Virus record (IMG/VR): IMGVR_UViG_3300025030_000041
Coordinates: 124,001 to 188,000 of that record
Direction: 5' to 3' (one strand)
DNA length: 64,000 nt
A program made the translations under genes and the position numbers. Below are positions 5,979 through 63,578 of the stretch, in pieces (position 1 is the stretch's first letter; each line of letters starts with the position of its first letter). The notes below the pieces were generated by a model that was not told the DNA's origin, did no database searches, and saw only the letters and a list, made by a program, of their open reading frames with translations.

Positions 5979-6608
5979 ATGAAACATATAAAACTTTTTG
6001 AACAGTTTATATCTGAAGAAGACATACCTAAACTTAGTCGTAAAGATATATTTATACCTAGGAGGCTTAAAGAAAGATGGGATGACTTACTTATCCATTA
6101 CCTTAATAAAGGGTATACCAAAGAACAAATATTCGTTGCTAAACCTTTTAATGAACTTATTTTTATAACTAAAAATAATATAGAAGATTTTAAGAATATT
6201 AAAGTTATAATTGGTAATGTTAGAATAAGCGAAATACATGATTTAAGAGAGCTAAGTATAGAAGAAGTAAATGGATATTTTAGTTGCTCTTATAATAACT
6301 TAACTAGTCTAGATGGCGTCCCTAAAAAAGTTGACGAATTTTATTGTTCTAATAATAAACTAACTAATCTCAAAGGATCTCCTAGTATAGTTAACGGTGG
6401 TTTTTATTGTTCTAATAATAAACTAACTAGTTTAGAGGGAGCTCCTAATAATGTTAATGAATTTGATTGTTCTTATAATTATTTAACTAGTCTAGAAGAT
6501 GCTCCTAAAATAGTTAATGGAAATTTTTTTATTACTTATAATTATAAAGATTTTACAGAAAAAGAAGTAAGAGAAGTAATCGATGTTAAAGGAATAGCTT
6601 ATGTTTAA
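5979..6608 (+). CDS. capsid-targeted 21-aa LRR protein, paralogue 1 (4 repeats)
   Basis: MKHIKLFEQFISEE, IFIPRRLKERWDD core, FxCSxNxLTSLEGAP repeats; start moved from 5922 to the conserved ATG. Confidence 0.85.
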   Translation: MKHIKLFEQFISEEDIPKLSRKDIFIPRRLKERWDDLLIHYLNKGYTKEQIFVAKPFNELIFITKNNIEDFKNIKVIIGNVRISEIHDLRELSIEEVNGYFSCSYNNLTSLDGVPKKVDEFYCSNNKLTNLKGSPSIVNGGFYCSNNKLTSLEGAPNNVNEFDCSYNYLTSLEDAPKIVNGNFFITYNYKDFTEKEVREVIDVKGIAYV

Positions 6609-6623
6609 AATAATTATTATTAT

Positions 6624-8585
6624 TTGCGTGATTTTTTAAAAGATGGAAATTTTACATCTATCAAGTTATCAGATAGTGAGAGTAAAATTAAAACTGATCC
6701 AAAAACAGGAGAGGTTATATCTCAGTCTTCCTCTTTTATTTGGACATCTGATAAAATAAATGATATTCTTCAAAAATATAATGACGGTTTAGTTGAAATT
6801 AAAGGGATGTCAAATAGTCCTTTTTTTACTGGAGATATAGAATTGCGCCGAGGAAATATATTGTTTGAGTATACTCCATATGAATTAAATGAAATTAGAA
6901 AATGTAGAGAAGATATATTATATTTTGCAGATACATACTGTAAACTAATGACTGACAATGGGTATGAATTAATAAAAACTGCACCACATCAAAGAGAAGT
7001 ATTACTAAATTATGTAAATAATAAATTTACAATTAGTATGCAATCTAGACAATCATTTAAGTCTACTACTGCTAGTATATTTATAGCATGGGTTACATGT
7101 TTTTCTTATGATAAGAATGTATTAATGATTGCTGATGTTAGTGAAACCACTAAAGAAATAATAGATAAGTTCTGGAATATTTATCGTACTTTGCCATTTT
7201 TTATAAAACCTGGTGTAATAAATGATTCAGTTATGTCAAAGAAATTTGATAATTTATGTAGAATATTTGGCAGAAATACTAGTACTAAAAGTGCTATTGG
7301 AGTAACTGCATCTATTGTTTATATTGATGAGTTTGCTCATATTGAGCCGTCGTTTATAGAAAAATTCTATAAATCTGTTTACCCAACTATTAGTTCTAAG
7401 CCTGATGGAAAAGTTATAATAACATCTACTCCAAATGGTCCAAATAAATTTTATGAATTATACTTAGGAGCATTAGATAAACAAAATGAATATGTTCCAA
7501 TTAGAGTAGACTGGTGGCAAATACCAGGAAGAGACGAAAAATGGAAAAATCAAGAAATTGCTAACTTAGGTAATATAGAGTCATTTAATCAAGAATATGG
7601 TTTACAGTTTTTTTCGAGCGACTCATTATTATTAACTTCAGATAATATAAAGAAAATAAACAACTTAAAAACTTCATTTATACATAAATCAATATTTAAT
7701 TTTGAAGATGAAGAGATAACATATACTGAATTAAAATGGCATCCTAATTTTAAATTAGATAATTTAAAAAATGATAAACATTGTTATGTATTTACTGTAG
7801 ATACTGCTGACGGTATAGAAAACGATTATTCTGTTATTAATATATGGAAATTAACAACTATTCCTTTTAAATCATTATTTAAAAATAGAGATCTATTTAG
7901 AAATGAAATAGATTGCTTTGGATTAGTACAAGTTGGAGTATTTAGAAGTAATACAACTGATATTAATCAATTTAGCCGTATATTAGAAATATTATCATTT
8001 AAAGTATTTAATACTGATCATGTAAGAATAATACTTGAAATGAATCATAAGGGTGACCTATTAGTTAATAAATTGGAAAATAATAATTCTTATTGGCCAG
8101 GATTATTATTATACAGCAAGCACTCTAATGAATCTAAAATATTAAAACCTGGTATAAAAACTACATCATCTAATAAAGTCAGGTTTTGTGAAAGATTAAA
8201 TTATTTTATAACGTTAGATAAAATAATGCCGACTGACTCTGAAACTATTAAAGAATTAAATGCATTTGGTAAAACTAAAAACGGGTCATATAGAGGACAA
8301 AATGGTCATGACGATTTAAGTATGAGCTGTGTATTTTTAAGTGCATTTTATGAAAGTTCATTATTTATAGAATTAGCAAGTGAAAGCTACGATTTAATAC
8401 AAAATGTTGAATATAAGAAAAAATTTGAAAATGAAATATTAAAATATAATACTGAACGCGAATATAGTACTAATTCTGTAAATTTCAATTCATTAAACCA
8501 AATAAATAATCTTTTTAATAATGTTAATAATGGAAATTACTTACCACATTCATTGATAAATAGTGAAGACCCTTATAAAATTTAA
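6624..8585 (+). CDS. terL: terminase large subunit (T4 gp17-like)
   Basis: SRQxxKST Walker A region, YIDEFAH Walker B, ITSTPNG coupling motif, TVDTADG and GHDDL RNase H-like nuclease motifs. Confidence 0.92.
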   Translation: MRDFLKDGNFTSIKLSDSESKIKTDPKTGEVISQSSSFIWTSDKINDILQKYNDGLVEIKGMSNSPFFTGDIELRRGNILFEYTPYELNEIRKCREDILYFADTYCKLMTDNGYELIKTAPHQREVLLNYVNNKFTISMQSRQSFKSTTASIFIAWVTCFSYDKNVLMIADVSETTKEIIDKFWNIYRTLPFFIKPGVINDSVMSKKFDNLCRIFGRNTSTKSAIGVTASIVYIDEFAHIEPSFIEKFYKSVYPTISSKPDGKVIITSTPNGPNKFYELYLGALDKQNEYVPIRVDWWQIPGRDEKWKNQEIANLGNIESFNQEYGLQFFSSDSLLLTSDNIKKINNLKTSFIHKSIFNFEDEEITYTELKWHPNFKLDNLKNDKHCYVFTVDTADGIENDYSVINIWKLTTIPFKSLFKNRDLFRNEIDCFGLVQVGVFRSNTTDINQFSRILEILSFKVFNTDHVRIILEMNHKGDLLVNKLENNNSYWPGLLLYSKHSNESKILKPGIKTTSSNKVRFCERLNYFITLDKIMPTDSETIKELNAFGKTKNGSYRGQNGHDDLSMSCVFLSAFYESSLFIELASESYDLIQNVEYKKKFENEILKYNTEREYSTNSVNFNSLNQINNLFNNVNNGNYLPHSLINSEDPYKI

Positions 8586-8592
8586 TTTAAAT

Positions 8593-9228
8593 ATGAAACA
8601 TATAAAACTATTTGAACAATTCATATCTGAAGAAGACACTCCTAAGCTTAGTGCTAAAGATATATTTATACCTAGAAGACTTAAAGAAAGATGGGATGAC
8701 CTGTTACTTCCTTACCTAAATAAAGGTTATACCAAAGAACAAATATTTGTAGCTAAACCCTTTGATGAACCTATTGTTATAACTAAAAATAATATAGGAG
8801 ACTTTAAAAGTATTAAAGTTATAATTGGTAATGTTAGAATACGTGGAATAACTGATTTGAGGAAGTTAGGTATAGAGGAAGTAACTGGTTTTTTTGATTG
8901 TTCTAATAATAGCTTAACTAGTCTAGAAGGAAGTCCTATTATAGTTGGAGGATTTTTCTATTGTTATAATAATAATTTAACTAGTCTTGAAGGAGCTCCT
9001 GCTACATTTAATGGATGGTTTAATTGTTCATTTAATAGCTTAACTAGTCTTGAAGGAGCTCCTGCTACATTTAATGGATGGTTTAATTGTTCATTTAATA
9101 GCTTAACTAGTCTAGAAGGAGCTCCTAAAGTAGTTAATGGCAAATTTGCTATTAATGATAATATAAAGAACTTTACAGAAAAAGAAGTAAGAGAAGTAGT
9201 TGATGTAAAAGGAAAAGTTATTGTTTAA
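8593..9228 (+). CDS. capsid-targeted LRR protein, paralogue 2 (4 repeats)
   Basis: same architecture; near-perfect 63-bp tandem duplication around 8990-9120. Confidence 0.85.
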   Translation: MKHIKLFEQFISEEDTPKLSAKDIFIPRRLKERWDDLLLPYLNKGYTKEQIFVAKPFDEPIVITKNNIGDFKSIKVIIGNVRIRGITDLRKLGIEEVTGFFDCSNNSLTSLEGSPIIVGGFFYCYNNNLTSLEGAPATFNGWFNCSFNSLTSLEGAPATFNGWFNCSFNSLTSLEGAPKVVNGKFAINDNIKNFTEKEVREVVDVKGKVIV

Positions 9229-9229
9229 A

Positions 9230-9856
9230 ATGAAACATATTAAATTATTTGAAGAATATATTAATAGTATAGAACTAATTACTGAATTAGCGATTAGCCT
9301 TGAAACACTACTTGATATTAATAATAAGTCTATTGCATTAGTTATGCAAGAACTTAAACATAAAAAGTATAAATACTCTATTTATGATTTTGAAAATTCT
9401 AAAGTTCTTGGATTTATGGAAATTGCTGAAGACGACGGCATAATGCAAGTATCTAAGGTTGCTTCTGAAAAAGGTTATGGCCCGCTATTATACGATATAT
9501 CCATGATGAATATTTATCCAAACGGACTTTCACCAGATAGAAGCTCAATAACTAGTGGAGCTCTAAATTTATGGAAATACTATTATGAAAATAGGCGAGA
9601 TATTATAAAAAAAGAAATTAAACCAGGAGATCCTGCCTATATGGAATCATATAAAATGGGAGAAGACCTTACTATACATACTAACCCTGAAATTTTAAAA
9701 CTATTAAACACTATTTATTATTTAAAACCAACTACTACATATTATAAATATACATCATTAAGCAATCAAATAATTAATGATAAAAATGCTTCGCCTAACT
9801 ATATTTTAAATAAAGGCCAAACTTACTTTTGGAAAAAATACCTTAATAAAGTATAA
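9230..9856 (+). CDS. capsid-targeted protein with GNAT-like fold
   Basis: MKHIKLFEEYI N-terminus; QVSKVASEKGYGPLLYD resembles the GNAT acetyl-CoA motif A; SPDRSSITSGALNLWKYY. Confidence 0.55.
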   Translation: MKHIKLFEEYINSIELITELAISLETLLDINNKSIALVMQELKHKKYKYSIYDFENSKVLGFMEIAEDDGIMQVSKVASEKGYGPLLYDISMMNIYPNGLSPDRSSITSGALNLWKYYYENRRDIIKKEIKPGDPAYMESYKMGEDLTIHTNPEILKLLNTIYYLKPTTTYYKYTSLSNQIINDKNASPNYILNKGQTYFWKKYLNKV

Positions 9857-10097: not shown

Positions 10098-10170
10098 TCC
10101 TCTGTAGCTCAGTTGGTAGAGCACATAACTGTTAATTATGTGGTCGGTGGATCATGCCCATCCAGAGGAG
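10098..10170 (+). tRNA. tRNA-Asn(GTT)
   Basis: acceptor TCCTCTG/CAGAGGA, D arm GCTC/GAGC, anticodon arm CATAA-CTGTTAA-TTATG, discriminator G; atypical T loop, no encoded CCA. Confidence 0.88.
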
Positions 10171-10188
10171 CATAAAAACTTTTATTTT

Positions 10189-12467: not shown

Positions 12468-12471
12468 TTAT

Positions 12472-17499: not shown

Positions 17500-18393
17500 T
17501 TAACTATAAACTTTTCCTTTTACATCAATTAATTCTCTTACTTCTTTTTGTGTAAATTTCTTTATATTATTATCAATCCAAACATTTCCTTTAACTATTT
17601 CAGGGGCTCCGTCAAGACTAGTTAGCATATTGTTATTACACATAAAACTTTCATTAATTATTCGTGGAGTTCCAATTAAATTAGTTAATATATTATAAGC
17701 ACACTTAAAGTATCTACTGACTATATTAGGGCCGCCTTCAAGACTAGTTAAGTTATTATTAGAACAATCAAAATATCCATTAACTGCAGTAGGACATCCT
17801 TCTAGACTAGTTAGTTTATTAGTATTACAATCAACATATCCATTAATCAATTTAGGCAAGTTGACTAGACTAGTTAAGTTATTATAAGAACAACTAAACG
17901 CACCACTTACTGTTTTTGGACCTCCTTCAAGACTAGTTAAGTTATTATTAGAACAATCAAAATATCCATTAACTGTAACAGGAGCTCCTTCAAGACTAGT
18001 TAAATTATTAGCATAACAATAAAAATTTCCATTCACTATAGTAGGAGATCCGTCTAAACTAGTTAAGGCATTATCAGAACAATCAAAAAAACCATCTATT
18101 TCATCTATACTTAATACTCTTAAATCATTTATACCTTTCACTCTAACATTACCTATTATTACTTTAATATTTTTAAAGTCTTCTATATTAGTATGCCCTA
18201 TACTAATAGCTTCATTAATAGGTTTCACTACAAATATTTGGTCTTTGGTATAACCTTTATTAAGGTAAGGAATAAGTAAGTCATCCCATCTTTCTTTTAG
18301 CCTTCTAGGTATAAATATATCTTTAGCGCTAAGCTTAGGAGTAGGGCTTTCTTCTTCAGATATAAATTGTTCAAATAGTTTTATATGTTTCAT
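17500..18393 (-). CDS. capsid-targeted LRR protein, paralogue 3 (8 repeats)
   Basis: conserved N-terminal core plus eight 21-aa repeats. Confidence 0.85.
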   Translation of the reverse strand: MKHIKLFEQFISEEESPTPKLSAKDIFIPRRLKERWDDLLIPYLNKGYTKDQIFVVKPINEAISIGHTNIEDFKNIKVIIGNVRVKGINDLRVLSIDEIDGFFDCSDNALTSLDGSPTIVNGNFYCYANNLTSLEGAPVTVNGYFDCSNNNLTSLEGGPKTVSGAFSCSYNNLTSLVNLPKLINGYVDCNTNKLTSLEGCPTAVNGYFDCSNNNLTSLEGGPNIVSRYFKCAYNILTNLIGTPRIINESFMCNNNMLTSLDGAPEIVKGNVWIDNNIKKFTQKEVRELIDVKGKVYS

Positions 18394-19699: not shown

Positions 19700-20275
19700 T
19701 TAAACATAAACTTTTCCTTTAACATCAACTACTCCTTTTACCTCTTCTTCGGTAAAGTTCTTTGTATTATCATTAATAGCAAAGTCGTCATTAACTACTT
19801 TAGGAGCTCCTTTAAGGTTAGTTAGTTTGTTATGACTGCAATAAAATCCAGCGTTAACTATAATAGGAGCTCCTTCTAGACTAGTTAACGTATTATTACT
19901 ACAAAAATAATCTTTAGTTACTAATAATTTAGGTCCTCCTTTTAAGCTAGTTAATCTATTAAATGAACAATTGAAATCTCCAGACACTTCATCTAAATTT
20001 AATTCTTTTAAAATATCTCCATTTATTATAACATCACCTATTATTACTTTAATATCCTTAAATTCTTTTACATTATTTTTAGTTATCTCTAGCTCTTCAT
20101 CAAGGGGTTTAGCAACGAATATTTGTTCTTTAGTATAACCTTTATTAAGGTAAGGAAGTACTAAGTCATCCCACCTTTCTTTTAGTCTCCTAGGTATAAA
20201 GATGTCTTTAGCACTAAGTTTAGGTTTCTTAGAGTCTTCAAGTATAAATTGTTCAAATAGTTTTATAGGTTTCAC
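19700..20275 (-). CDS. capsid-targeted LRR protein, paralogue 4 (3 repeats, GTG start)
   Basis: MKPIKLFEQFILED plus family core and repeats. Confidence 0.85.
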   Translation of the reverse strand: MKPIKLFEQFILEDSKKPKLSAKDIFIPRRLKERWDDLVLPYLNKGYTKEQIFVAKPLDEELEITKNNVKEFKDIKVIIGDVIINGDILKELNLDEVSGDFNCSFNRLTSLKGGPKLLVTKDYFCSNNTLTSLEGAPIIVNAGFYCSHNKLTNLKGAPKVVNDDFAINDNTKNFTEEEVKGVVDVKGKVYV

Positions 20276-23758: not shown

Positions 23759-24319
23759 TTATGGTTTTCTTATTTCTGTCCAAGAGTCTGCTCTTAATGA
23801 TAAGTCTAATGCATAAAGTTCTTCTGAATTATAATCTAAAGCCATAGGATTAAATTTTTCATTTAATATAACGGGACTAAATTTAAATTCTCTAAAAATA
23901 TCTCCGTTTTTGTTGTGTATAGCAATATAACATTCTCCGGCATAATCTTTTTTAAGTCCTTGTGATCCTGTCTCAGGGTCAAATTGAATATCTGCCCATT
24001 TACGTAGTATATTATATACGTACATACTATTATTATCGTTTAAGTTAACGGTGAAGTTAATTTTAAGATCTGCTGTAGTATTTTCAGGTTTAGACTTAGC
24101 ATATGACCTAGTCGAGAATTTATATTTTTGTTCAACGACTCCAACTGGCGTAATTTCAGGTAGTCCTTCTATTTTTAGAACGTGTTCAACTAAAATTTCA
24201 GATCCTGCTGAAACTGTAGCCGGAGGAGTTATAATAACTTGAAATTGATTTAAAAATACAGGTTCGTAGTTTTTTACACTAGCTGTTGAATTTTTAAAAT
24301 GTGGTAAGCCTGATGCCAT
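23759..24319 (-). CDS. tail tube protein (T4 gp19-like)
   Basis: 186 aa; YEPVFLNQFQV, INFTVNLND, LRKWADIQFDPETG..G.KKDY tube signature. Confidence 0.8.
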   Translation of the reverse strand: MASGLPHFKNSTASVKNYEPVFLNQFQVIITPPATVSAGSEILVEHVLKIEGLPEITPVGVVEQKYKFSTRSYAKSKPENTTADLKINFTVNLNDNNSMYVYNILRKWADIQFDPETGSQGLKKDYAGECYIAIHNKNGDIFREFKFSPVILNEKFNPMALDYNSEELYALDLSLRADSWTEIRKP

Positions 24320-24375: not shown

Positions 24376-25011
24376 TTAAACATAAACGTCTTCTTTTACA
24401 TCAATTACTTCTATTACTTCTTTTTTTGTAAATTTCTTTGTATTATTAGAACAATCAAACCATCCATTAATTGTAGTAGGAGCTCCTTCAAGACTAGTTA
24501 AATAATTATAAGAACAATCAAAACCTCCATTAACTGTAACAGGGGCTCCTTCAAGACTAGTTAACTTATTATTAGAACAATAAAAATATCCATTAACTGT
24601 AACAGGAGCTCCTTCAAGACTAGTTAACTTATTATAAAAACATGAAAAATATCCATTAACCGTCATAGGAGCTCCTTCTAGACTAGTTAAGTTAGTATTA
24701 GAACAATCAAAATTTCCAACTACTTCTTCTATATTTAGCTCTCTTAAATCGTTTATTTCCTTTATTCTAACATTACTAATTATGACTTTAATATTCTTAA
24801 AGTCTTCTATATTATTTTTAGTTATAAGCATATCTTTATTAAAAGGTTTAGCAATAAATATTTGTTCTTTGGTATAGCCTTTATTTAGGTAAGGAAGTAA
24901 CAGGTCATCCCAACGTTCTTTAAGTCTTCTAGGTATAAATATATCTTTAGCACTAAGTTTAGGAGTTTCTTCTTCAGATATAAATTGTTCAAACAGCTTC
25001 ATATGTTTCAT
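24376..25011 (-). CDS. capsid-targeted LRR protein, paralogue 5 (4 repeats)
   Basis: family core and repeats. Confidence 0.85.
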   Translation of the reverse strand: MKHMKLFEQFISEEETPKLSAKDIFIPRRLKERWDDLLLPYLNKGYTKEQIFIAKPFNKDMLITKNNIEDFKNIKVIISNVRIKEINDLRELNIEEVVGNFDCSNTNLTSLEGAPMTVNGYFSCFYNKLTSLEGAPVTVNGYFYCSNNKLTSLEGAPVTVNGGFDCSYNYLTSLEGAPTTINGWFDCSNNTKKFTKKEVIEVIDVKEDVYV

Positions 25012-25545: not shown

Positions 25546-26175
25546 TTATTTAGGAGGGGTAGTCGCTGCTTCTTTTTTTCTATCTATTACTCCATAAATT
25601 ATTTTACTTCCTTTTTTAAAGTCTTGAATACTCCTAAATCTAAAAAATGTGGATCCTTCTACTACTATTGCAGTATAAGAAATTTTTGAATTTCCTAATT
25701 CAGTTTTAGCTTTAGATATATTTTGTGGATTTATTAATTCAATTTGTAATTGATTTGTTGTATCATCTGCTTCATTTAATGGAAATGTAAAGTATATAAT
25801 ATACACGTCACCAGATCTCCAATTATCAGAGTATAGTATGCCATCTAATTCGTCTTTATCAGAATCATCTAAGTTTCTCCATTTTTCTATTTTATAATTT
25901 CCTTTTTTAAATCCAATTGGTGAATCCCTTTCCATATTTCCAACTGAATATCCTTCGTCTTTTAAGTATTTTCTTGCATCATAAAATGCTTGAAAATCAG
26001 TTTCTCCTTTATCTACTTTTTCGGCTAATGCTACGTTTCTATTTTCGATTCCAAAATCATTTTTAATTAAATCAATATCAGATACTTTTTTATTAATGAA
26101 ATCATATAAGGTTTCATTTTTAATACTTACTAAATTTTCTTGTATAAATTCTTCAAATAATTTTATAAATTTCAT
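25546..26175 (-). CDS. capsid-targeted hypothetical protein
   Basis: MKFIKLFEEFIQE; alternative upstream ATG (26205) overlaps the LRR-6 stop. Confidence 0.7.
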   Translation of the reverse strand: MKFIKLFEEFIQENLVSIKNETLYDFINKKVSDIDLIKNDFGIENRNVALAEKVDKGETDFQAFYDARKYLKDEGYSVGNMERDSPIGFKKGNYKIEKWRNLDDSDKDELDGILYSDNWRSGDVYIIYFTFPLNEADDTTNQLQIELINPQNISKAKTELGNSKISYTAIVVEGSTFFRFRSIQDFKKGSKIIYGVIDRKKEAATTPPK

Positions 26176-26197: not shown

Positions 26198-26833
26198 TTA
26201 AACATAAACCTTTCCTTTTACATCAATTACTTCTCTTACTTCTTTTTCTGTAAATTTCTTTGTATTATTAGAACAATCAAACCATCCATTAATTGTAGTA
26301 GGAGCTCCTTCAAGACTAGTTAGTTTATTCGTATTACAATCAAAATATCCATTAAATGTAGCAGGAGCTCCTTCAAGACTAGTTATATTATTAATAAAAC
26401 AATAATAACTTCCCTTAGCTATAGTAGGACCCCCTTCAAGACTATTTAACTTATTATTAGAACAATAAAAACCTCCATTAACTGTAGTAGGAGATCCTTC
26501 AAGACTAGTTAAACTATTATTAGAACAATAAAAAAAACCAGTTACTTCGTCTATATCTAGCCCACTCAAATAAGTTATTTCATGTATTCTAACGTTACCT
26601 ATTATAACTTTAATATTCTTAAAGTCTTCTATATTATTTTTAGTTATAAGCATATCTTTATTAAAAGGTTTAGCGACAAATATTTGTTCTTTAGTATAAC
26701 CTTTATTTAGGTAAGGAAGTAACAGGTCATCCCAACGTTCTTTAAGTCTTCTAGGTATAAATATATCTTTAGCACTAAGTTTAGGAGTTTCTTCTTCAGA
26801 TATAAACTGCTCAAAAAGTTTTATATGTTTCAT
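26198..26833 (-). CDS. capsid-targeted LRR protein, paralogue 6 (4 repeats)
   Basis: family core; N- and C-terminal blocks nearly identical to paralogue 5. Confidence 0.85.
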   Translation of the reverse strand: MKHIKLFEQFISEEETPKLSAKDIFIPRRLKERWDDLLLPYLNKGYTKEQIFVAKPFNKDMLITKNNIEDFKNIKVIIGNVRIHEITYLSGLDIDEVTGFFYCSNNSLTSLEGSPTTVNGGFYCSNNKLNSLEGGPTIAKGSYYCFINNITSLEGAPATFNGYFDCNTNKLTSLEGAPTTINGWFDCSNNTKKFTEKEVREVIDVKGKVYV

Positions 26834-27525: not shown

Positions 27526-27825
27526 TTAATTTAATTTATTTTGAATAAAATATGTTATTTTAATACTACCATCAGCTTGAGTATCTATATCAAATAATTC
27601 AGTATCCCATAGATCTCCTAGGACATCATTCATTAGTTCTATGGTTAAAGTATCTTCTGGAATAACATTATACACATAATTTCCATCTGTAGTTACTCCA
27701 TCATATTCTATATCTCTAGCATGTTCTTTAAAGGTATTCCATAATATTTTTTTAATTTCATCTGGGTGATACTCTTCAAATTCATTAATAAATTCCTCAA
27801 ATATTTTAATGTGTTTCATTTTCAT
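27526..27825 (-). CDS. capsid-targeted small acidic protein
   Basis: MKHIKIFEEFINE. Confidence 0.7.
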   Translation of the reverse strand: MKMKHIKIFEEFINEFEEYHPDEIKKILWNTFKEHARDIEYDGVTTDGNYVYNVIPEDTLTIELMNDVLGDLWDTELFDIDTQADGSIKITYFIQNKLN

Positions 27826-28520
27826 GTATAAACTCCACCTTTTACTTTAACAGCGTTTCTCACTTCTTTTTCTGTAAATACTTTACTATTATAAGTAATA
27901 GTAAAATTTCCACCAACAATAGTAGGAGCTCCTTCTAGACTAATTAACATATTATCAGAACAATGAAAATTTCCAGTAACTGTAGTAGGAGCTCCTTCTA
28001 GACTAATTAACATATTATCAGAACAATGAAAATTTTCATTAACTGTAGTAGGAGCTCCTTCTAGACTAGTTAATTTATTATTAAAACAATAAAAATCTCC
28101 ATTAACTATAATAGGGCTTCCTTCAAGACTAGTTAATTTATTATTAAAACAATAAAAATCTCCATTAACTATAATAGGGCTTCCTTCAAGACTAGTTAGC
28201 TTATTATTAGAACAATTAAAATATCCAGTTACTTCTTCTATACCTAGTGCTCTCAGATCAGTTATTTCTTTTATTCTAACACCACCTATTATTACTTTAA
28301 TATTTTTAAAGTCTTCTATATTATCTTTAGTTATAATAATAGGTTCATTAAATGGTTTAGCAACAAGTATTTGTTCTTTGGTATAACCTTTATTTAGGTA
28401 AGGAATGAGCAAATCATCCCATCTTTCTTTAAGCCTCCTAGGTATAAATATATCTTTAGCGCTAGGCTTAGGAGTTTCTTCTTCAGATATGAATTGTTCA
28501 AAAAGTTTTATATATTTCAT
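27822..28520 (-). CDS. capsid-targeted LRR protein, paralogue 7 (5 repeats)
   Basis: family core; two pairs of near-identical 63-bp repeats. Confidence 0.85.
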   Translation of the reverse strand: MKYIKLFEQFISEEETPKPSAKDIFIPRRLKERWDDLLIPYLNKGYTKEQILVAKPFNEPIIITKDNIEDFKNIKVIIGGVRIKEITDLRALGIEEVTGYFNCSNNKLTSLEGSPIIVNGDFYCFNNKLTSLEGSPIIVNGDFYCFNNKLTSLEGAPTTVNENFHCSDNMLISLEGAPTTVTGNFHCSDNMLISLEGAPTIVGGNFTITYNSKVFTEKEVRNAVKVKGGVYT

Positions 28521-43233: not shown

Positions 43234-43749
43234 TTAATAATTAATAATTCCAGCTTTAGTATCAATTGCATGTTTTATTTCTTTTTGTAAAAACTTTTTG
43301 CCTCTATTTTGGGATATGATAACATCATCTGTAACTAATTTAGGAGCTCCTTCTAGACTAGTTAATGCATTAAAAGTACTAATGAATCTGCCATTTACTA
43401 TTTTAGGACTACCTTTACGATTAGTTAAATTATTGCTAGAACAATTAAAATCTCCAAGCACCTCATCTATATCTATATCCCATTTATTCATATCGCCGTT
43501 TATATAAACTAAACCAACTATAATTTTAATATCTTTAAAATCTTTTACATTATTATCATTTATAATAACTTCATCTCTAAGAGATTTAGCAACTACTATT
43601 TGTTCTTTTGTATAACCTTTATTAAGGTAAGGGATAAGAAGGTCATCCCATCTTTCTTTAAGTCTTCTAGGTATAAATATATTTTTACGACTAAGTTTAG
43701 GTATGTCTTCTTCAGATATAAACTGTTCAAATAATTTAATACGTCTCAT
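43234..43749 (-). CDS. capsid-targeted LRR protein, paralogue 9 (2 repeats, divergent)
   Basis: MRRIKLFEQFISEE plus family core. Confidence 0.8.
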   Translation of the reverse strand: MRRIKLFEQFISEEDIPKLSRKNIFIPRRLKERWDDLLIPYLNKGYTKEQIVVAKSLRDEVIINDNNVKDFKDIKIIVGLVYINGDMNKWDIDIDEVLGDFNCSSNNLTNRKGSPKIVNGRFISTFNALTSLEGAPKLVTDDVIISQNRGKKFLQKEIKHAIDTKAGIINY

Positions 43750-43798: not shown

Positions 43799-44296
43799 TT
43801 AAAAATTAAAATCTTTTGCAATTTTAGTTATATTGTTATCTAATTCAGTTAGGTCACACTCTTTAGATTTTAATATATAAAAATCCAAATTAAAAAATTG
43901 TAATGGCTTATGTGTATACTTTAAAGATGACCTGTATTTTTTAACAATTTTATAACAAAACCTATCATAAAAAAGTCTTCTAGTTTTAGATTCGTCTAAT
44001 GCACAAAAAATAAAAGACTCTGGCTGTATTTCTTCTATAAATTGAATGGCTGCTGAATCGATAGTAGGAATAGATAAAAAAGCTTTTTTAGGATCATTTA
44101 ACAACTTAAATTCTCCATTTGCTTTAAACTTAAATAACCAGTGGTTTTGTAAAGTTGAATAGTTTGTGATAGCTATATCATATTTAATATCATCTATTTT
44201 AAATACTCCTATCCATTCGCTTTGCGATTTATTCCAATTTATTAATAACGGATTTTTTAATCCTTCTATAATAAATTTTTGAAAATTTTTAAACAT
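43799..44296 (-). CDS. capsid-targeted protein (intact relative of pseudogene at 2232/3897)
   Basis: MFKNFQKFIIE; RRLFYDRF motif. Confidence 0.65.
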   Translation of the reverse strand: MFKNFQKFIIEGLKNPLLINWNKSQSEWIGVFKIDDIKYDIAITNYSTLQNHWLFKFKANGEFKLLNDPKKAFLSIPTIDSAAIQFIEEIQPESFIFCALDESKTRRLFYDRFCYKIVKKYRSSLKYTHKPLQFFNLDFYILKSKECDLTELDNNITKIAKDFNF

Positions 44297-44993
44297 AAAC
44301 TTCTCCTTTTATATCAATAACATGTCTTACTTCTTTTTCTGTAAATTTCTTTAAATTATTGCTTATATTAAAATCTCCTCTTATTATAGAGGGTGTCCCT
44401 TCAAGGCTAGTTAATCTATTATAAGAACAATCAAAAAAGCCATTAACTATAACGGGACCACCATCTAAACTAGTTAAGATATTATTAGAACAATTAAAGT
44501 TACCTCCTATTGTGGAAAGGCATCCTTCAAGACTAGTTAACTTATTATTAGAGCATGAGAAATTTCCATTAACTGATACAGGACTTCCTTCTAAACTAGT
44601 TAAGTTATTATTAGAACAACTAAAATACCCATTAACTATAGTAGGACCGCCTTCTAAACTAGTTAGTTTATTTAACTTATTTAAGTAACAATCAAAATTT
44701 CCTGATATTTCATCTACCCTTAATACTCTCAAATCATTTATTCCTCGTATTATAGCATTACCTATTATAACTTTAATATTCTTAAAGTCTTTTATATTAT
44801 TTTTAGTTATACTAATAACTTCATTAAAGGGTTTAGTTACAAATATTTGGTCTTTTGTATAACCTTTATTTAGATATGGAATACACAAAGAATCTCGTCT
44901 TTCTTTAAGTGGTATAAATATATCTTTGACACTATAATTATGATTCTTAAATTTATTAGATGCATTACAGTCTAATAGACTATGATATTTCAT
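44289..44993 (-). CDS. LRR protein, paralogue 10 (5 repeats; targeting peptide replaced)
   Basis: family core from KDIFIP onward, unrelated first ~20 aa. Confidence 0.8.
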   Translation of the reverse strand: MKYHSLLDCNASNKFKNHNYSVKDIFIPLKERRDSLCIPYLNKGYTKDQIFVTKPFNEVISITKNNIKDFKNIKVIIGNAIIRGINDLRVLRVDEISGNFDCYLNKLNKLTSLEGGPTIVNGYFSCSNNNLTSLEGSPVSVNGNFSCSNNKLTSLEGCLSTIGGNFNCSNNILTSLDGGPVIVNGFFDCSYNRLTSLEGTPSIIRGDFNISNNLKKFTEKEVRHVIDIKGEVYV

Positions 44994-51101: not shown

Positions 51102-51614
51102 ATGGGATATGCTAAATTATATGAAGAGTTTCTTTTTGAAGTATCAGTAGAAGCTGAAGATGTAAAAACAGAAGATTTAATATCAGAAGATAAGTTTAAA
51201 TCTCTAATTACTAAATTAGTTAAACATGAATTAAAAGAAGAACTTGATCCAGAAGAAGAAACTAAAGAAGTTTCTATGGAAGGTTTAACTAAAGAAGAAC
51301 TTGAGAAAGTAAATAAGTTTATTGAAACTTTATGGGTTAATGAAGAACCTAGTAAAAATGAAGTAAATGAAGCTGATTGGTTTGGATTAAAAAGAAAAAA
51401 ATTAGAAGAAAATTTAAATAGTAAAGTAAAAGTATGGGTTCCTAACGCTATGAATAAGCCTACTCAAGAAATTCTTAATAAATTCTGGGAAGATGCTAAA
51501 AACGATAGTTATGACGGACTTCCTAGTATAGGCGAAGATAAAAACTTAATATATAGACCATCCAGTTCAATAAAATGGGGTACAAAACGACATGCTTTTG
51601 GCGGCGGTAAATAA
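51102..51614 (+). CDS. capsid-targeted acidic protein
   Basis: MGYAKLYEEFLFE; VNE|AD site; ATG at 51102. Confidence 0.6.
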   Translation: MGYAKLYEEFLFEVSVEAEDVKTEDLISEDKFKSLITKLVKHELKEELDPEEETKEVSMEGLTKEELEKVNKFIETLWVNEEPSKNEVNEADWFGLKRKKLEENLNSKVKVWVPNAMNKPTQEILNKFWEDAKNDSYDGLPSIGEDKNLIYRPSSSIKWGTKRHAFGGGK

Positions 51615-56469: not shown

Positions 56470-57270
56470 TTACTTACTTACTTTTACAGTATCAGATAGT
56501 GCCATTATTTTATATAATTCAGTTAAATTAACACATAATCCGGGTGTACTATTCATTTTAGTATCAATAATTTCGGCCAGGGTTCTTAGTAAAATAAATA
56601 AAGGTTCTCCTAATACAGCTTTATACTGAGGAATATGCCCAATTTTAACAGTTGCTCCATCAGTCCAAATTTCATTTGATATATCATGAATACTACTTCC
56701 TGCTGTAGTATTAACTTGAGAACTACTATTAATTGTTATAATTCCTCCTTTTAATTCTATCATAGACTGAGTTCCTTTATGTTCTAATACTATAGAATTA
56801 TCTGGCAGAATATTAACTTTAGATTCATCTAATTCAAAAGTTAATCCTTTAGTCGTAGTATAATACATTTTTAGTTTTACATCGCCATCAAAACAAAATA
56901 TATGAGTTCCATCATACTCACTTTGTAATTGGTCTTTAACGTCTTTTGCTAATTCTTGGTGAAAATGATATTCTGGACAGTAAATATCTTGGTTATCAAA
57001 AGTAACTTTAAGAATAGCCCCATTTTTAGGTATTGAGATTTGTCCAGATAATCCGTCTTGCCCAAAAATATTACCTAAACGAGGATACGCCCATGGTAAA
57101 TCTTCAGTTGCTAAATTATCAAAAACGCCAAATACATTAATTTTACATCTTCCTTTTTTTTCAGGATCTTGATTATCTACAACCTTACCTAAAAAATCTC
57201 TACCTAAAAATTCATCTCTACCTAAATTATAAATATCTCTATTTTGGCCTATTTGCCTTGATAAACTCAT
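56470..57270 (-). CDS. baseplate central spike/hub, gp5/VgrG N-terminal OB-fold type, no lysozyme domain
   Basis: FLGKVVDNQDPEKKGRCKINVFG...DLPWAYP...SIPK.G..L.V.F. Confidence 0.8.
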   Translation of the reverse strand: MSLSRQIGQNRDIYNLGRDEFLGRDFLGKVVDNQDPEKKGRCKINVFGVFDNLATEDLPWAYPRLGNIFGQDGLSGQISIPKNGAILKVTFDNQDIYCPEYHFHQELAKDVKDQLQSEYDGTHIFCFDGDVKLKMYYTTTKGLTFELDESKVNILPDNSIVLEHKGTQSMIELKGGIITINSSSQVNTTAGSSIHDISNEIWTDGATVKIGHIPQYKAVLGEPLFILLRTLAEIIDTKMNSTPGLCVNLTELYKIMALSDTVKVSK

Positions 57271-62380: not shown

Positions 62381-62410
62381 AAAAAAGCCTTAAAAAATTA
62401 AGGCCTTTTT
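62381..62410 (-). terminator. probable intrinsic terminator
   Basis: AAAAAAGCCTTAA-AAAA-TTAAGGCCTTTTT imperfect hairpin downstream of 62431-62832. Confidence 0.55.
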
Positions 62411-62430
62411 AAAATTATGTTAAATATGCA

Positions 62431-62832
62431 TTATTCAGTTGGAAATAACTCCCTAATATCGTCATGATCAATAGATTTATCACCAGATACTGTTTTTAGT
62501 ATGCGACCATCACCATCTTCATCATGCTGACCAAATTTAACTTTAGCAACTGTAGTAAAATGTTCACGAATTTTAGAAAAATAATTTATTTCATCTTCAT
62601 CATAATCATCAATACTAAATGGAATAGCATATACTGGTAAAATACTATACCCTGCATCATTTTTATCATAATGCTCCCAATGGCCTTCATCAACAAAAAT
62701 ATAGTATATATCCTTTTTTAATTTATTTTTTTCATATTTTTGTTTTTGTTTTTCAAAGTCAGGGTCCCCATCATATTTATATTTTGGTCTAGGCGACTTA
62801 AATTCTTCAAATAATTTTACATATTTTTTCAT
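62431..62832 (-). CDS. capsid-targeted acidic protein
   Basis: MKKYVKLFEEF. Confidence 0.65.
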   Translation of the reverse strand: MKKYVKLFEEFKSPRPKYKYDGDPDFEKQKQKYEKNKLKKDIYYIFVDEGHWEHYDKNDAGYSILPVYAIPFSIDDYDEDEINYFSKIREHFTTVAKVKFGQHDEDGDGRILKTVSGDKSIDHDDIRELFPTE

Positions 62833-62892
62833 TTTCTTATTATATTTTTAATTATTTATATTGAAAAATTTCAGAAAACTTATAAAAACTAG

Positions 62893-62918
62893 TATATATA
62901 TATATATATATATATATA
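62893..62918. repeat. (TA)13 microsatellite
   Basis: direct count in intergenic DNA. Confidence 0.9.
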
Positions 62919-62945
62919 ACATTGATACACAATTAAATAAAATTT

Positions 62946-63578
62946 TCAAAAATAAACTTCTCCTTTTATATCAACTATGCCTCTTATTTCTTCTTCTGTA
63001 AATTTCTTCACATTATCGATAATCATAAAATCTCCTTTAACTATCTTAGGAGCTCCTTCTATACTAGTTATAATATTATAAGAACACTTAAAATCTCCAT
63101 TAACTATCGTAGGAGCTCCTACTAGACTAGTTATATCATTAGTAGAACAACTAAAATCTCCATTAGATATAGTAGGGCCGCCTTCTAGACTAGTTAACTT
63201 ATTATGAAAACAACTAAAATCTCCATTAGATATAGTAGGAGATCCTTTTAAACTAGTTAATCCATTAAATGAACAATTAAACTCTCCAGATACTTCTTCT
63301 AAATTTAATTCTTTTAAAATATCACCATTTATTCTAACACCACCTATTATTACTTTAATATCCTTAAATTCTTTTACATTAGTGTTATTTATACTAATAA
63401 ATTCATTAAAATCTTTAGATACATATATTTGGTCTTTAGTATACCCTTTATTTAGGTATGGAATAAGTAAGTCATCCCATCTTTCTTTAAGTCTTCTTGG
63501 TATAAATATATCTTTAGCACTAAGTTTAGGAGCTTCTTCTTTGAGTATAAATTGTTCAAATAGTTTTATATGTTTCAT
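62946..63578 (-). CDS. capsid-targeted LRR protein, paralogue 11 (4 repeats)
   Basis: family core; middle block shared with paralogue 4. Confidence 0.85.
   Translation of the reverse strand: MKHIKLFEQFILKEEAPKLSAKDIFIPRRLKERWDDLLIPYLNKGYTKDQIYVSKDFNEFISINNTNVKEFKDIKVIIGGVRINGDILKELNLEEVSGEFNCSFNGLTSLKGSPTISNGDFSCFHNKLTSLEGGPTISNGDFSCSTNDITSLVGAPTIVNGDFKCSYNIITSIEGAPKIVKGDFMIIDNVKKFTEEEIRGIVDIKGEVYF

What the first reader, a model, noticed from the sequence alone, without database searches (positions are those of the whole stretch)
5979..63578. Eleven dispersed paralogues of a variable LRR protein: an antibody-like repertoire in a phage
Seen: copies at 5979, 8593, 17500, 19700, 24376, 26198, 27822, 40648, 43234, 44289 and 62946 share an N-terminal core (IFIPRRLKERWDD...YLNKGYTKEQI) and a C-cap (FTEKEVR..IDVKG.VYV). 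Between them lie 4, 4, 8, 3, 4, 4, 5, 1, 2, 5 and 4 repeats of about 21 aa (xGxFxCxxNxLTSLEGAPxxV; 44 in total). The framework is constant, while positions around F and C vary among Y/F/W/H/D/N/S. Established: in LRR solenoids these beta-strand positions form the concave binding face, as in variable lymphocyte receptors. Inference: a diversified binder family, plausibly inhibitors or decoys for host defence proteins.
Basis: partly seen in the sequence, partly recalled or inferred. Interest (0 to 1): 0.86.

Follow-up and report, generated by a model that had tools for sequence, protein, structure and literature searches.

The report
Tagged variable LRR family in phage
A large T4-like phage carries at least 18 copies of a small leucine-rich-repeat protein whose predicted binding face is diversifying, and each copy begins with a 13-residue tag that resembles the signal phage T4 uses to load proteins into its head, so the copies may be pre-packed binders delivered into the host.

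Summary

- **Source.** The window is part of a 246-kb T4-like jumbo myovirus (IMG/VR contig), probably of a Bacteroidota host. At least 7 more copies lie outside the window, giving 18 or more.
- **Lineage-specific.** The N-terminal core occurs only in this phage lineage, whereas the LRR type itself occurs in more than 7,000 metagenome proteins.
- **Selection.** Predicted concave-face positions 3, 5 and 8 give dN/dS of about 2. The framework gives 0.34, and its synonymous codons are far more uniform than genome usage.
- **Repeat number.** It differs by exact 63-nt units between strains.
- **New finding: a portable tag.** The first 13 residues (MKHIKLFEQF-I-x-E) form a separable module under strong purifying selection and are unstructured in AlphaFold2. 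Five unrelated ORFs in the window carry the tag, as do at least 61 unrelated protein families in IMG/VR. Conservation stops abruptly after an (I/V/L)-x-E.
- **Best explanation, unproven.** The tag resembles the T4 capsid-targeting sequence and the gp21 cleavage motif, and this phage has a gp21-type protease. The proteins are therefore probably head-packaged, ejected LRR binders.

"Antibody-like" is overstated, because nothing suggests somatic diversification.

The parts
5979..6608 (+). LRR paralogue, 209 aa, 4 units, with tag MKHIKLFEQFISE. It lies directly upstream of the large terminase gene.
8593..9228 (+). LRR paralogue, 211 aa, 4 units, including an exact 63-nt tandem duplication. It lies directly downstream of the terminase gene. 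A strain variant (P0011) lacks one unit.
17500..18393 (-). LRR paralogue, 297 aa, 8 units (the longest array)
19700..20275 (-). LRR paralogue, 191 aa, 3 units, GTG start
24376..25011 (-). LRR paralogue, 211 aa, 4 units, immediately upstream of the tail-tube gene
26198..26833 (-). LRR paralogue, 211 aa, 4 units. It shares a 107-nt identical tract with copy 24376.
27822..28520 (-). LRR paralogue, 232 aa, 5 units, with exact tandem unit duplications. A strain variant (P0018) lacks two units.
40648..41094 (-). LRR paralogue, 148 aa, 1 unit, immediately upstream of the tail-sheath gene
43234..43749 (-). LRR paralogue, 171 aa, 2 units, divergent C-cap
44289..44993 (-). LRR paralogue, 234 aa, 5 units plus a partial one. 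The N-terminal tag is absent and the core is degenerate.
62946..63578 (-). LRR paralogue, 210 aa, 4 units
9230..9856 (+). Unrelated 208-aa ORF with the same N-terminal tag (MKHIKLFEEY...), directly downstream of LRR copy 8593
25546..26175 (-). Unrelated 209-aa ORF with the tag (MKFIKLFEEFIQE), directly downstream of LRR copy 26198
27526..27819 (-). Unrelated 97-aa ORF with the tag (MKHIKIFEEFINE), directly downstream of LRR copy 27822
51102..51614 (+). Unrelated 170-aa ORF with a tag variant (MGYAKLYEEFLFE)
62431..62832 (-). Unrelated 133-aa ORF with a tag variant (MKKYVKLFEEF), downstream of LRR copy 62946
6807..8585 (+). Context: large terminase subunit (T4-type), flanked on both sides by LRR genes
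37736..40564 (-). Context: tail sheath
23759..24319 (-). Context: tail tube
56470..57270 (-). Context: baseplate hub / gp5-like OB domain

Best explanation
The genes are a lineage-specific expansion (at least 18 copies in one 246-kb T4-like jumbo phage) of small cytoplasm-type LRR solenoids of 15-31 kDa. Each copy has four parts: (i) a 13-residue N-terminal tag; (ii) a flexible linker; (iii) an invariant helical cap/core; (iv) 1-8 cysteine-ladder LRR units whose strand-face residues are under diversifying selection, closed by a conserved C-cap.

I propose that the tag is a capsid-targeting propeptide of the T4 internal-protein type. It would dock the protein onto the scaffold core of the prohead. 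The phage's gp21-type (S77) prohead protease would then cut it off after the (I/L/V)-x-E at residues 11-13. The mature LRR proteins would stay in the head and be ejected with the DNA. On this model the virion carries a panel of ready-made binders that meet host proteins before any phage gene is expressed. The most plausible targets are variable host defence or surface-proximal proteins, which would explain the arms-race signature.

Shown: the family, its architecture, the selection pattern, the modularity and wide distribution of the tag, and the presence of the protease. Inferred: packaging, cleavage, ejection and the nature of the targets.
For: **Family and fold**
- Alignment, units and AlphaFold2 model.
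- Sequence match to internalin J (3bz5), E 3e-19.

**Lineage-specific expansion**
- Residues 1-95 find only 19 protein clusters among 5.8 billion, all from this phage and its strains.
- Eighteen genes were seen in the roughly 135 kb of the contig that I read.

**Diversifying selection**
- dN/dS is 2.0 at unit positions 3, 5 and 8 (bootstrap 1.4-2.5), against 0.34 for the framework and 0.34 for the core.
- Framework codons are nearly fixed although the genome uses several synonyms. Thr is ACT in 40/40 units against 60% in the background, and Ser is AGT in 38/40 against 31%.
- In the variable codons the 1st and 2nd bases vary while the 3rd-base T is kept.

**The tag is a separate module**
- dN/dS is 0.11 with dS 0.62, so conservation acts on the protein and not the DNA.
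- AlphaFold2 pLDDT is below 50 for residues 1-32 although this is the most conserved stretch.
- Homology between copies starts exactly at the ATG.
- The 7-mer occurs 14 times in the six-frame translation, always at residue 4-5 of an ORF, and 0 times in shuffles. Five of these ORFs are unrelated to the LRR family.
- In IMG/VR the exact first 10 residues occur in more than 120 stretches (the scan was truncated), on at least 61 unrelated protein clusters.
- In those clusters, residues 11-13 were not part of the search pattern, yet they are [ILVM]-x-E in 43/61 against 1.5% per position in the background. Conservation collapses at residue 14.
- Pfam domains in tagged cargo start at residue 25-34.

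**Resemblance to the T4 capsid-targeting sequence (CTS)**
- T4 IPII/IPIII begin MKTYQEFIAE and IPI begins MKTFKEF. The CTS is a 10-19-residue propeptide. Residues 4 and 7 determine targeting and residues 8 and 10 determine processing (PMC9026906).
- T4 internal proteins share only the CTS and act as anti-restriction proteins (PMC3012670).

**Required machinery is present**
- An S77/gp21-type protease-scaffold gene and a gp23-type capsid gene lie on the same contig, with five LRR genes immediately upstream.
- The capsid protein's propeptide region contains IAE39 and LFE55.

**Independent phages**
- In locus L065, four tagged ORFs sit between the portal, protease-scaffold and major capsid genes. 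This is where T4 has its core proteins gp67 and gp68.
- Other tag-bearing contigs also carry gp21-, gp23-, gp18- and gp19-like genes.

**Gene position**
- The LRR genes are embedded with tiny or overlapping gaps in co-directional late structural operons (terminase, sheath, tube). This fits virion proteins better than early cytoplasmic inhibitors.

**Wider LRR family**
- In 52 of 99 metagenome relatives the first [ILVM]-x-E ends at residue 11-13, against 0.9% in the background.
Against: - There is no direct evidence of packaging, cleavage or ejection. The phage is uncultured and no proteome exists.
- The mature proteins are mostly mildly acidic (pI 5-6.8), unlike the basic T4 IPII/IPIII.
- [ILV]-x-E is a short motif, and further matches occur inside the folded part.
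- Some tagged cargo elsewhere are ordinary-looking enzymes, whose packaging is less obviously useful: a cytidylyltransferase, an AAA_33 kinase and, with a variant tag, a pterin dehydratase.
- Tagged genes are not enriched near head genes overall. About 5% of non-self loci had the protease within reach, which is roughly the chance level.
- One contig carrying a tagged LRR relative shows a ClpP-family protease and no S77 protease in the 20 kb visible.
- The dN/dS estimate is a crude Nei-Gojobori count over paralogous repeat units that recombine. It is not a phylogenetic site model.
- Solvent exposure of the variable positions was inferred from canonical LRR geometry and the DSSP string. It was not measured on coordinates.
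Confidence: 0.45

Rival explanations
1. The proteins are cytoplasmic binders, decoys or adaptors made during infection and not packaged. The tag would serve another purpose, for example a docking helix for a phage assembly factor or chaperone, or a stability or translation element. The invariant core would recruit a common partner, such as a protease, to targets chosen by the LRR array.
For: The evidence for a binder under diversifying selection is the same as above. There is no signal peptide or membrane segment. The nearly invariant core at residues 22-70 suggests a shared partner. The acidic to neutral pI is unlike basic T4 internal proteins. Tagged enzymes such as a cytidylyltransferase and a kinase would work perfectly well in the cytoplasm.
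Against: This reading does not explain four things: why a 13-residue unstructured peptide is kept identical across at least 61 unrelated families; why it ends sharply at an (I/V/L)-x-E; why it resembles the T4 CTS; and why tagged genes sit between the portal, protease and capsid genes in L065. Placement in late structural operons is also a poor fit for inhibitors that must act before host defences fire.
Confidence: 0.27
2. The proteins are external virion decorations or adhesins. The tag and core would anchor them on the head, neck or tail. The variable LRR face would bind host surface glycans or proteins and broaden or tune adsorption. The Goslar tail-associated fibre proteins are comparable: a conserved N-terminal module carries carbohydrate-binding or LRR domains.
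For: The genes are interleaved with terminase, sheath, tube, baseplate and fibre genes. Phage LRR domains have been proposed as host-recognition modules (PMC13742148; PMC10945359). The closest solved relative, internalin J, is an extracellular adhesin-type LRR. Diversifying selection is typical of receptor-binding proteins.
Against: The proteins are small monomer-sized solenoids. There is no recognisable fibre, trimerisation or capsid-binding (Hoc/Soc-like) domain. The tag is also found on intracellular-type enzymes. Eighteen different decorations would be unusual.
Confidence: 0.15
3. This is a neutral or selfish expansion. A recombination-prone repeat gene spreads through the genome, and the x positions are simply unconstrained. 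There would be no panel of distinct specificities.
For: Repeat number changes by exact units. Mosaic copies exist. One copy, 44289, looks decayed. In any LRR family the x positions are the least constrained.
Against: At positions 3, 5 and 8 dN clearly exceeds dS, and the 3rd codon base is conserved while the 1st and 2nd vary. Relaxed constraint cannot push omega above 1. All 11 window copies keep intact ORFs, caps and framework at dS of about 0.4-0.6. The tag has omega 0.11.
Confidence: 0.08
4. The variable codons are produced by programmed hypermutation (a diversity-generating retroelement or similar).
For: The variable codons are mostly N-A-T or N-N-T with the third-base T kept, for example TAT, GAT, AAT, CAT, TTT, AGT and GGT. 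This superficially resembles the adenine-directed spectrum of such elements acting on AAT codons.
Against: No reverse transcriptase was found among the window's ORFs. There is no template/variable repeat pair. Variation is spread over 44 units in 11 or more genes instead of one C-terminal variable region. The paralogues differ throughout at dS 0.4-0.6. LRR is not a known target fold (own knowledge).
Confidence: 0.02

Closest known systems
Internalin J (InlJ) of Listeria, the cysteine-ladder LRR (PDB 3bz5; Bublitz et al. 2008, cited in PMC9525666)
   Same: Both have a 21-residue period. A Cys replaces the hydrophobic residue at LRR position 6 (42 of 44 units here). Both contain an N-x-L-T-x-L segment. 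It is the best sequence match among solved structures, at E 3e-19 over several repeats.
   Different: InlJ is a secreted, cell-wall-anchored bacterial surface protein with internalin cap and Ig-like domains. The phage proteins have no signal peptide, use their own N- and C-caps, have only 1-8 units and carry the N-terminal tag.
T4 internal proteins IPI, IPII and IPIII with their capsid-targeting sequence (Mullaney and Black 1996; PMC9026906, PMC3012670)
   Same: In both, a short N-terminal peptide is shared by otherwise unrelated proteins of one phage. It starts M-K-x-hydrophobic-K/Q, has F at position 7 and ends in (I/L)-x-E. Both phages have a gp21-type protease. In both cases the cargo is polymorphic and consistent with an arms race.
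   Different: The mature parts share no homology. The tag here is 13 residues and differs in detail. The cargo is LRR solenoids, mostly not basic. There are at least 24 tagged genes here against 3-4 in T4. Packaging is unproven.
Ejection-protein paralogue families of giant phages SPN3US and phiKZ (PMC5694885)
   Same: These are multi-copy head-protein paralogues that have diverged but keep identical N-terminal residues containing an x-E protease motif. They are cleaved by a T4-related prohead protease.
   Different: Their propeptides are usually longer than 100 residues and the motif is A/S-x-E. The proteins are not LRRs, and the phage lineage is different (Chimalliviridae-like).
Lamprey variable lymphocyte receptors (VLRs)
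   Same: Both are LRR solenoids in which diversity is concentrated on concave-face strand positions and is rich in Tyr, Asp, Asn, Ser and Trp. The number of LRR modules varies.
   Different: VLR diversity is assembled somatically from cassettes and the proteins have Cys-knot LRRNT/LRRCT caps. Here all diversity is germline, in separate complete genes. Sequence similarity is negligible (E 0.53).
Repeat-protein gene expansions of giant viruses, such as the FNIP/FGxxFN LRR family of Cafeteria roenbergensis virus (PMC9525666)
   Same: Both are large virus-encoded families of LRR proteins of unknown targets, expanded within one virus lineage.
   Different: Those are viruses of eukaryotes, with a different LRR class (22-23 residues, FGxxFN) and no N-terminal tag.
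LRR substrate-recognition domains of bacterial IpaH/SspH-type ligases
   Same: Both are short bacterial-type LRRs used to select target proteins. There are weak sequence and fold matches.
   Different: There is no ligase domain. The repeat length and consensus differ, and the E-values are far weaker than for InlJ.

Membership tests
Leucine-rich repeat superfamily | Tandem 20-30-residue units containing LxxLxLxxN/CxL | tested here: met
   There are 44 units of 21 residues. F is at LRR position 4 (40/44), C at 6 (42/44), N at 9 (43/44) and L at 11 (41/44).
Leucine-rich repeat superfamily | Curved solenoid with one parallel beta-strand per unit | tested here: met
   The AlphaFold2 model has pLDDT above 90 across the array, with one short strand per unit. 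Foldseek returns only LRR proteins near the top, but weakly (best E 9e-3). This is a prediction, not an experiment.
Leucine-rich repeat superfamily | Match to a curated Pfam LRR model above its gathering score | tested here: not met
   LRR_4 scores 14-24 bits against a cut-off of 27. The family is not captured by the current models.
InlJ-type cysteine-ladder LRR / internalins | 21-residue period with Cys at the inner position 6 | tested here: met
InlJ-type cysteine-ladder LRR / internalins | Secretion signal, internalin N-cap and inter-repeat Ig-like domain, cell-wall anchor | tested here: not met
   There is no hydrophobic signal peptide and the proteins end in their own 25-residue C-cap. They are therefore not internalins.
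T4-type capsid-targeted internal proteins | 10-19-residue N-terminal propeptide shared by otherwise unrelated proteins of the phage | tested here: met
   The 13-residue tag is on 10 of 11 LRR copies and on 5 unrelated ORFs in the window. It is also on at least 61 unrelated clusters in IMG/VR.
T4-type capsid-targeted internal proteins | Propeptide ends in the prohead-protease motif (L/I)-x-E | tested here: met
   I-S-E or I-L-E at residues 11-13 in 9 of 11 window copies, and L-K-E at residues 12-14 in copy 62946. [ILVM]-x-E is present in 43 of 61 unrelated tagged clusters, against 1.5% per position in the background.
T4-type capsid-targeted internal proteins | Phage encodes a gp21-type (S77) prohead protease, a scaffold core and a gp23-type capsid | tested here: met
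   Pfam Peptidase_S77 and Gp23 on the same phage. There is a tblastn match to T4 gp21 and to gp23.
T4-type capsid-targeted internal proteins | Protein physically present in the head, N-terminally processed and ejected with the DNA | not testable with these tools
   This needs virion proteomics or fusion-protein packaging assays.
Variable lymphocyte receptor / antibody-like somatic repertoire | Somatic assembly of one incomplete gene from flanking cassettes, with LRRNT/LRRCT caps | tested here: not met
   All copies are complete, separately placed genes with their own start codon and caps. The LRRNT hits are insignificant.
Diversity-generating retroelement target | Reverse transcriptase plus template/variable repeat pair with adenine-specific differences | tested here: not met
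   There is no RT domain in the window's ORFs that I scanned, and variation is spread over 44 units. The remaining roughly 110 kb of the contig was not examined.

The most novel reading that the evidence does not exclude
A broad clade of uncultured T4-like phages uses one portable 13-residue propeptide (MKHIKLFEQF-[IVL]-N-E) as a general loading address for the capsid. It would pre-pack dozens of unrelated cargo families. These include arrays of rapidly evolving LRR binders, Acb1-like 2H phosphoesterases, NMNAT-like nucleotidyltransferases, zeta-toxin-like kinases and lysozymes. All would be injected with the DNA as a ready-made counter-defence and takeover kit. In this reading the phage in the window has expanded the LRR cargo to 18 or more specificities, a germline binder repertoire delivered as protein.
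Probability: 0.4. Interest if true: 0.88.

Novelty: new variant of a known kind. Interest (0 to 1): 0.72.

Why it matters
Three things would follow if the reading is right.

- **Scale of protein delivery.** The T4 internal-protein strategy, in which anti-defence proteins are delivered inside the capsid, would be used far more widely and with far more cargo than the three or four T4 examples suggest. A simple sequence tag would then allow ejected effectors to be predicted directly from metagenomes.
- **A new binder scaffold.** Phages would have independently arrived at an LRR-based, positively selected multigene binder repertoire. Its targets would point to the host defence or envelope components that matter most in Bacteroidota.
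- **A possible tool.** A 13-residue address that loads arbitrary proteins into a capsid is useful for phage-based protein delivery, as the T4 CTS already is.

Even if packaging is disproved, two results stand as unreported observations: an 18-member LRR family with dN/dS above 1 on its binding face, and a tag shared by at least 61 unrelated phage protein families.

Tried and rejected
- **Shared upstream promoter or cassette.** The 60 nt upstream of the 11 genes show no conservation, and homology starts at the ATG.
- **T4-type late promoter TATAAATA.** There are 43 matches against 39.6 expected, so no enrichment and no timing inference.
- **DGR-type hypermutation.** It was considered because the variable codons are N-N-T. 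No reverse transcriptase was found in the window.
- **Recent gene conversion as the only cause of framework identity.** The longest identical tract between any two copies is 107 nt and otherwise 52 nt or less. The copies are therefore old (dS 0.4-0.6), not freshly homogenised.
- **Curated family assignment.** Pfam LRR_4 is below threshold. PHROGs returns only unknown-function families phrog_21719 and phrog_7816. None of the five tagged non-LRR ORFs got a functional assignment: four had no PHROG hit and one (27526-27819) only a weak hit to an unknown-function family.
- **Fold search.** It gave only weak, generic LRR hits, so it adds nothing beyond the sequence match to InlJ.
- **Basic charge as a signature of internal proteins.** It is not found.
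- **Enrichment of tagged genes next to head genes across IMG/VR loci.** This is about the chance level. Only individual loci (L065, L009) show the striking arrangement.
- **Literature.** No paper in the library contains the tag sequence. No paper was found describing an LRR expansion in a phage.

Full report
**1. What the window is**

The window has 22-32% G+C (mostly about 26%) and long co-directional gene blocks. Profile searches identify the following:
- a T4-type large terminase (6807-8585);
- topoisomerase II subunits (10626-13809);
- a collagen-motif tail fibre (13801-16623);
- a tail tube (23759-24319);
- a homing endonuclease (21709-23685);
- a helicase (30417-32066);
- a tail sheath (37736-40564);
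- a baseplate hub (56470-57270).

The terminase is about 34% identical to those of phage PAU, the Lak phages and other huge phages, and 30% identical to that of a Flavobacterium phage. No DNA-level relative exists among deposited phage genomes.

The window maps to IMG/VR contig IMGVR_UViG_3300025030_000041 (246,115 bp), at roughly positions 124,001-188,000. One ORF (52235-54364) carries a signal peptide, SprB and PKD repeats and a type-IX-secretion sorting domain. Together with the absence of Shine-Dalgarno-like sequences upstream of the genes, this points to a Bacteroidota host. The host assignment is an inference.

**2. The observation**

All eleven genes are real ORFs at the stated positions. 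They align end to end at 58-76% identity to the first copy. The repeat counts are 4, 4, 8, 3, 4, 4, 5, 1, 2, 5 and 4, giving 44 units with a period of 21 residues.

The unit consensus is N-G-x-F-x-C-S-x-N-x-L-T-S-L-E-G-A-P-x-x-V. Seven further copies lie on the same contig outside the window:
- five directly upstream of the prohead protease and major capsid genes;
- one at about 26 kb;
- one at about 209 kb.

That makes at least 18 copies in the roughly 135 kb I could read. One of the outside copies keeps the N-terminal tag and the LRR array but lacks the 'IFIPRR...YLNKGYTKEQI' core, so the parts are modular.

**3. Fold and class**

An AlphaFold2 model of copy 5979, built with the 11 paralogues as the alignment, has mean pLDDT 85.8. 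It shows a helix at residues 28-43 followed by a regular strand-per-unit solenoid with pLDDT above 90. Residues 1-32 are below 50.

A profile of the family matches the solved structure of internalin J at E 3e-19 over several repeats. Internalin J is the LRR with a 'cysteine ladder' and a 21-residue period (reference in PMC9525666). IpaH/SspH-type LRRs match far more weakly. Pfam LRR_4 stays below its cut-off, and PHROGs gives only unknown-function families.

The LRR type is common in metagenomes. More than 7,000 proteins reach E of 1e-3 or better, usually with other N- and C-terminal domains. It also occurs in a cultured 196-kb Vibrio phage as a 'hypothetical protein'. In contrast, the N-terminal 95 residues of the window's family find only 19 protein clusters among 5.8 billion, all from this phage and its close strains. 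The family is therefore a lineage-specific expansion.

**4. How it evolves**

*Where the variation sits.* Entropy peaks at unit positions 3, 5, 8, 10 and 19, with lesser peaks at 1, 17 and 20. Positions 3, 5 and 8 are dominated by Y, D, N, S, F, H, G and W. With F at LRR position 4 and C at position 6, positions 3 and 5 are the outward-facing strand residues of the concave sheet, and 8 and 10 begin the ascending loop. This assignment rests on established LRR geometry and the DSSP strands of the model. Exposure was not computed from coordinates.

*Codon evidence.*
- Framework codons are almost fixed although the genome uses several synonyms. Thr is ACT in 40/40 units against 60% in the background. 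Ser is AGT in 38/40 against 31%. Pro is CCT in 39/43 against 41%.
- In the variable codons the first and second bases vary while the third-base T is retained.

*Nei-Gojobori dN/dS.*

| Region | dN/dS |
|---|---|
| 13-codon tag (dS 0.62) | 0.11 |
| Core | 0.34 |
| LRR framework | 0.34 |
| Unit positions 3, 5, 8 | 2.0 (bootstrap over units 1.4-2.5, relative to overall dS) |

These counts are crude, because the units are paralogous, they recombine and the genome is AT-rich. Even so, the direction is clear and is not what relaxed constraint alone would give.

*Repeat number and mosaics.*
- Copies 8593 and 27822 contain exact 63-nt tandem duplications.
- Their counterparts in other assemblies (P0011, P0018) lack exactly those units. 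Collapse of repeats during assembly cannot be excluded.
- P0028 is a clean chimera of two other copies.
- Between paralogues the longest identical DNA tract is 107 nt, so the copies are old and are maintained.
- No reverse transcriptase was found in the window, so a diversity-generating retroelement is unlikely.

**5. The N-terminal tag**

The most conserved part of the proteins is the first 13 residues (MKHIKLFEQFISE). AlphaFold2 nevertheless leaves this stretch unstructured, and homology between copies begins exactly at the ATG.

*In the window.* In the six-frame translation the 7-mer [IVA]K[LI][FY]E[EQ][FY] occurs 14 times, always at residue 4-5 of an ORF, and never in shuffled sequence. 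Five of these ORFs share nothing else with the LRR family or with each other: 9230-9856, 25546-26175, 27526-27819, 51102-51614 and 62431-62832. Three of them lie immediately downstream of an LRR gene. More tagged, unrelated ORFs occur elsewhere on the contig.

After the tag was removed, the 123 complete proteins of 70 residues or more fell into 61 unrelated clusters.

Within those 61 clusters:
- residues 11-13, which were not part of the search pattern, are [ILVM]-x-E in 43 (E13 in 48), against 1.5% per position in the background;
- conservation vanishes from residue 14 onward;
- the residue after E13 is most often S, A, K or G.

*Cargo that could be named.*
- an Acb1-like 2H phosphoesterase;
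- a cytidylyltransferase (NMNAT-like);
- an AAA_33/zeta-toxin-like kinase;
- DUF5661 and DUF5824 proteins;
- a phage lysozyme.

In each case the Pfam domain starts at residue 25-34, so the tag plus a short linker is an add-on. Among 99 metagenome LRR relatives from other lineages, the first [ILVM]-x-E ends at residue 11-13 in 52, against 0.9% in the background. No paper in the library contains the tag sequence.

**6. Why I read the tag as a capsid-targeting propeptide**

*The T4 precedent.* The T4 internal proteins begin MKTYQEFIAE (IPII, IPIII) and MKTFKEF (IPI). I read these from the T4 record and did not rely on memory. Three points come from the literature:
- These 10-19-residue propeptides target otherwise unrelated proteins to the scaffold core. 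Residues 4 and 7 matter for targeting and residues 8 and 10 for processing (PMC9026906).
- gp21 removes them after Glu in an (L/I)-x-E context (PMC5694885).
- The cargo is a polymorphic set of anti-restriction proteins that share only the CTS (PMC3012670).

*The match here.* The tag has a hydrophobic residue at position 4, Phe at position 7 and (I/V/L)-x-E at its end.

*The machinery.*
- The same contig encodes a gp21-type S77 protease fused to a repetitive scaffold domain, and a gp23-type capsid protein.
- The capsid protein's N-terminal region contains IAE39 and LFE55, about where T4 gp23 is cut.
- Five LRR genes lie immediately upstream of the protease gene.

*Independent phages.* In L065 the gene order is portal, tagged ORF, protease-scaffold, three tagged ORFs, major capsid protein. 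These are the slots that T4 fills with core proteins gp67 and gp68. Other tag-bearing contigs carry T4-like sheath, tube, terminase, protease or capsid genes.

*Gene position.* The LRR genes of the window are spliced into late structural operons with gaps of 0-60 nt or with overlaps. That position makes sense for proteins that must be present when proheads assemble.

*Precedent from giant phages.* SPN3US has diverged ejection-protein paralogues that keep identical N-terminal residues containing a protease motif (PMC5694885).

**7. What argues against it**

- Nothing here shows packaging or cleavage.
- The mature LRR proteins are mostly mildly acidic.
- The motif is short.
- Some tagged cargo look like ordinary metabolic enzymes.
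- Tagged genes are not generally enriched near head genes.
- One contig with a tagged LRR relative shows a ClpP-type protease, and no S77 protease, in the visible 20 kb.

I therefore give the full mechanism (packaged, cleaved, ejected, and binding host defence or other host proteins) a confidence of 0.45. Confidence in the component claims is:

| Claim | Confidence |
|---|---|
| Real family | above 0.95 |
| Diversifying selection on the strand face | about 0.75 |
| Tag is a separable functional module | about 0.9 |
| Tag is a capsid-targeting propeptide | about 0.5-0.55 |

**8. Rivals**

- Cytoplasmic binders or adaptors with some other role for the tag (0.27).
- External virion adhesins (0.15). 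Compare the Goslar fibre proteins, which carry LRR domains on a conserved N-terminal module, and the tail-module LRR-like protein of a vibriophage.
- Neutral or selfish expansion (0.08).
- Programmed hypermutation (0.02).

**9. Comparison with what is known, and novelty**

By fold and sequence these are InlJ-type cysteine-ladder LRRs, but they are not internalins. By proposed mechanism they work like T4 internal proteins, though membership in that group cannot be claimed without proteomics. The resemblance to lamprey VLRs is limited to where the diversity sits.

I found no report of an LRR multigene family in a phage or of this tag. I rate the finding 'new variant of a known kind': a virus-encoded repeat-protein expansion combined with T4-style tagged cargo. 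The tag itself may be the more important discovery.

Noticed in passing
window 52235-54364 (+): This phage-encoded 709-aa protein has an N-terminal signal peptide, an SprB repeat, PKD domains and a type-IX-secretion C-terminal sorting domain. The phage may therefore put a protein on the host's surface through the host's T9SS. It also supports a Bacteroidota host.
   Followed up: partly
IMG/VR loci L025-L144, e.g. L136:4690-6535, L065:1172-5725: The exact N-terminal decapeptide MKHIKLFE[EQ]F occurs on at least 61 unrelated protein families in many uncultured phage contigs. Several tagged small ORFs often lie in a row. Conservation ends sharply after an (I/V/L)-x-E at residues 11-13.
   Followed up: yes
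L089:10488-11045(-), L093:56-649(-), L094:1120-1851(-), L018:738-1592(+): Named cargo behind the tag includes an Acb1-like 2H phosphoesterase, an NMNAT-like cytidylyltransferase, a zeta-toxin/AAA_33-like kinase and a phage lysozyme. These functions are compatible with counter-defence or entry.
   Followed up: partly
L009:11857-13902 (same contig as the window): The prohead protease (S77) is fused to a long C-terminal domain. That domain is made of degenerate Asn-rich repeats of about 14 residues (...NINYTQHVAENTN...), presumably the scaffold.
   Followed up: no
window 21709-23685 (-) and L009:15678-17432 (+): There are two copies of a large DUF7487/HNH-type homing endonuclease. One lies next to the tail-tube gene and one directly after the major capsid gene. 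This resembles the seg/mob genes that interrupt T4 structural clusters.
   Followed up: no
window 8593-9228 and 27822-28520: Both genes contain exact 63-nt tandem unit duplications. Protein variants from other assemblies (P0011, P0018) lack exactly these units. This is either real strain-level repeat-number variation or repeat collapse during assembly.
   Followed up: partly
window 10098-10171 (+): A single tRNA-Asn (GTT) lies between the tagged ORF 9230-9856 and the topoisomerase genes. Asn is the most frequent residue at the LRR framework and variable positions.
   Followed up: no
L022:7561-12418 (NCBI GCA_043534235.1, 290-kb contig): Another large viral contig carries six tandem LRR paralogues of the same repeat type. 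They have a different N-terminal domain and a tag variant (MKNLKTYRQLFES). Similar expansions have therefore arisen independently elsewhere, there in tandem and not dispersed.
   Followed up: partly
L024:5968-6603 (Vibrio phage VB_VaC_SRILMA, PP083314.1): A cultured 196-kb vibriophage encodes a 211-aa protein made almost entirely of near-identical units of the same LRR type. It lies next to a DnaB-like helicase gene and is annotated only as hypothetical. It could serve as an experimental handle on the fold.
   Followed up: no
window 2511-3872 (+), 4216-5967 (+), 41095-43191 (-), 46422-50540 (-), 60614-62344 (-): Several large ORFs of 453-1372 aa in the structural region have no Pfam or PHROG match at all.
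   Followed up: no
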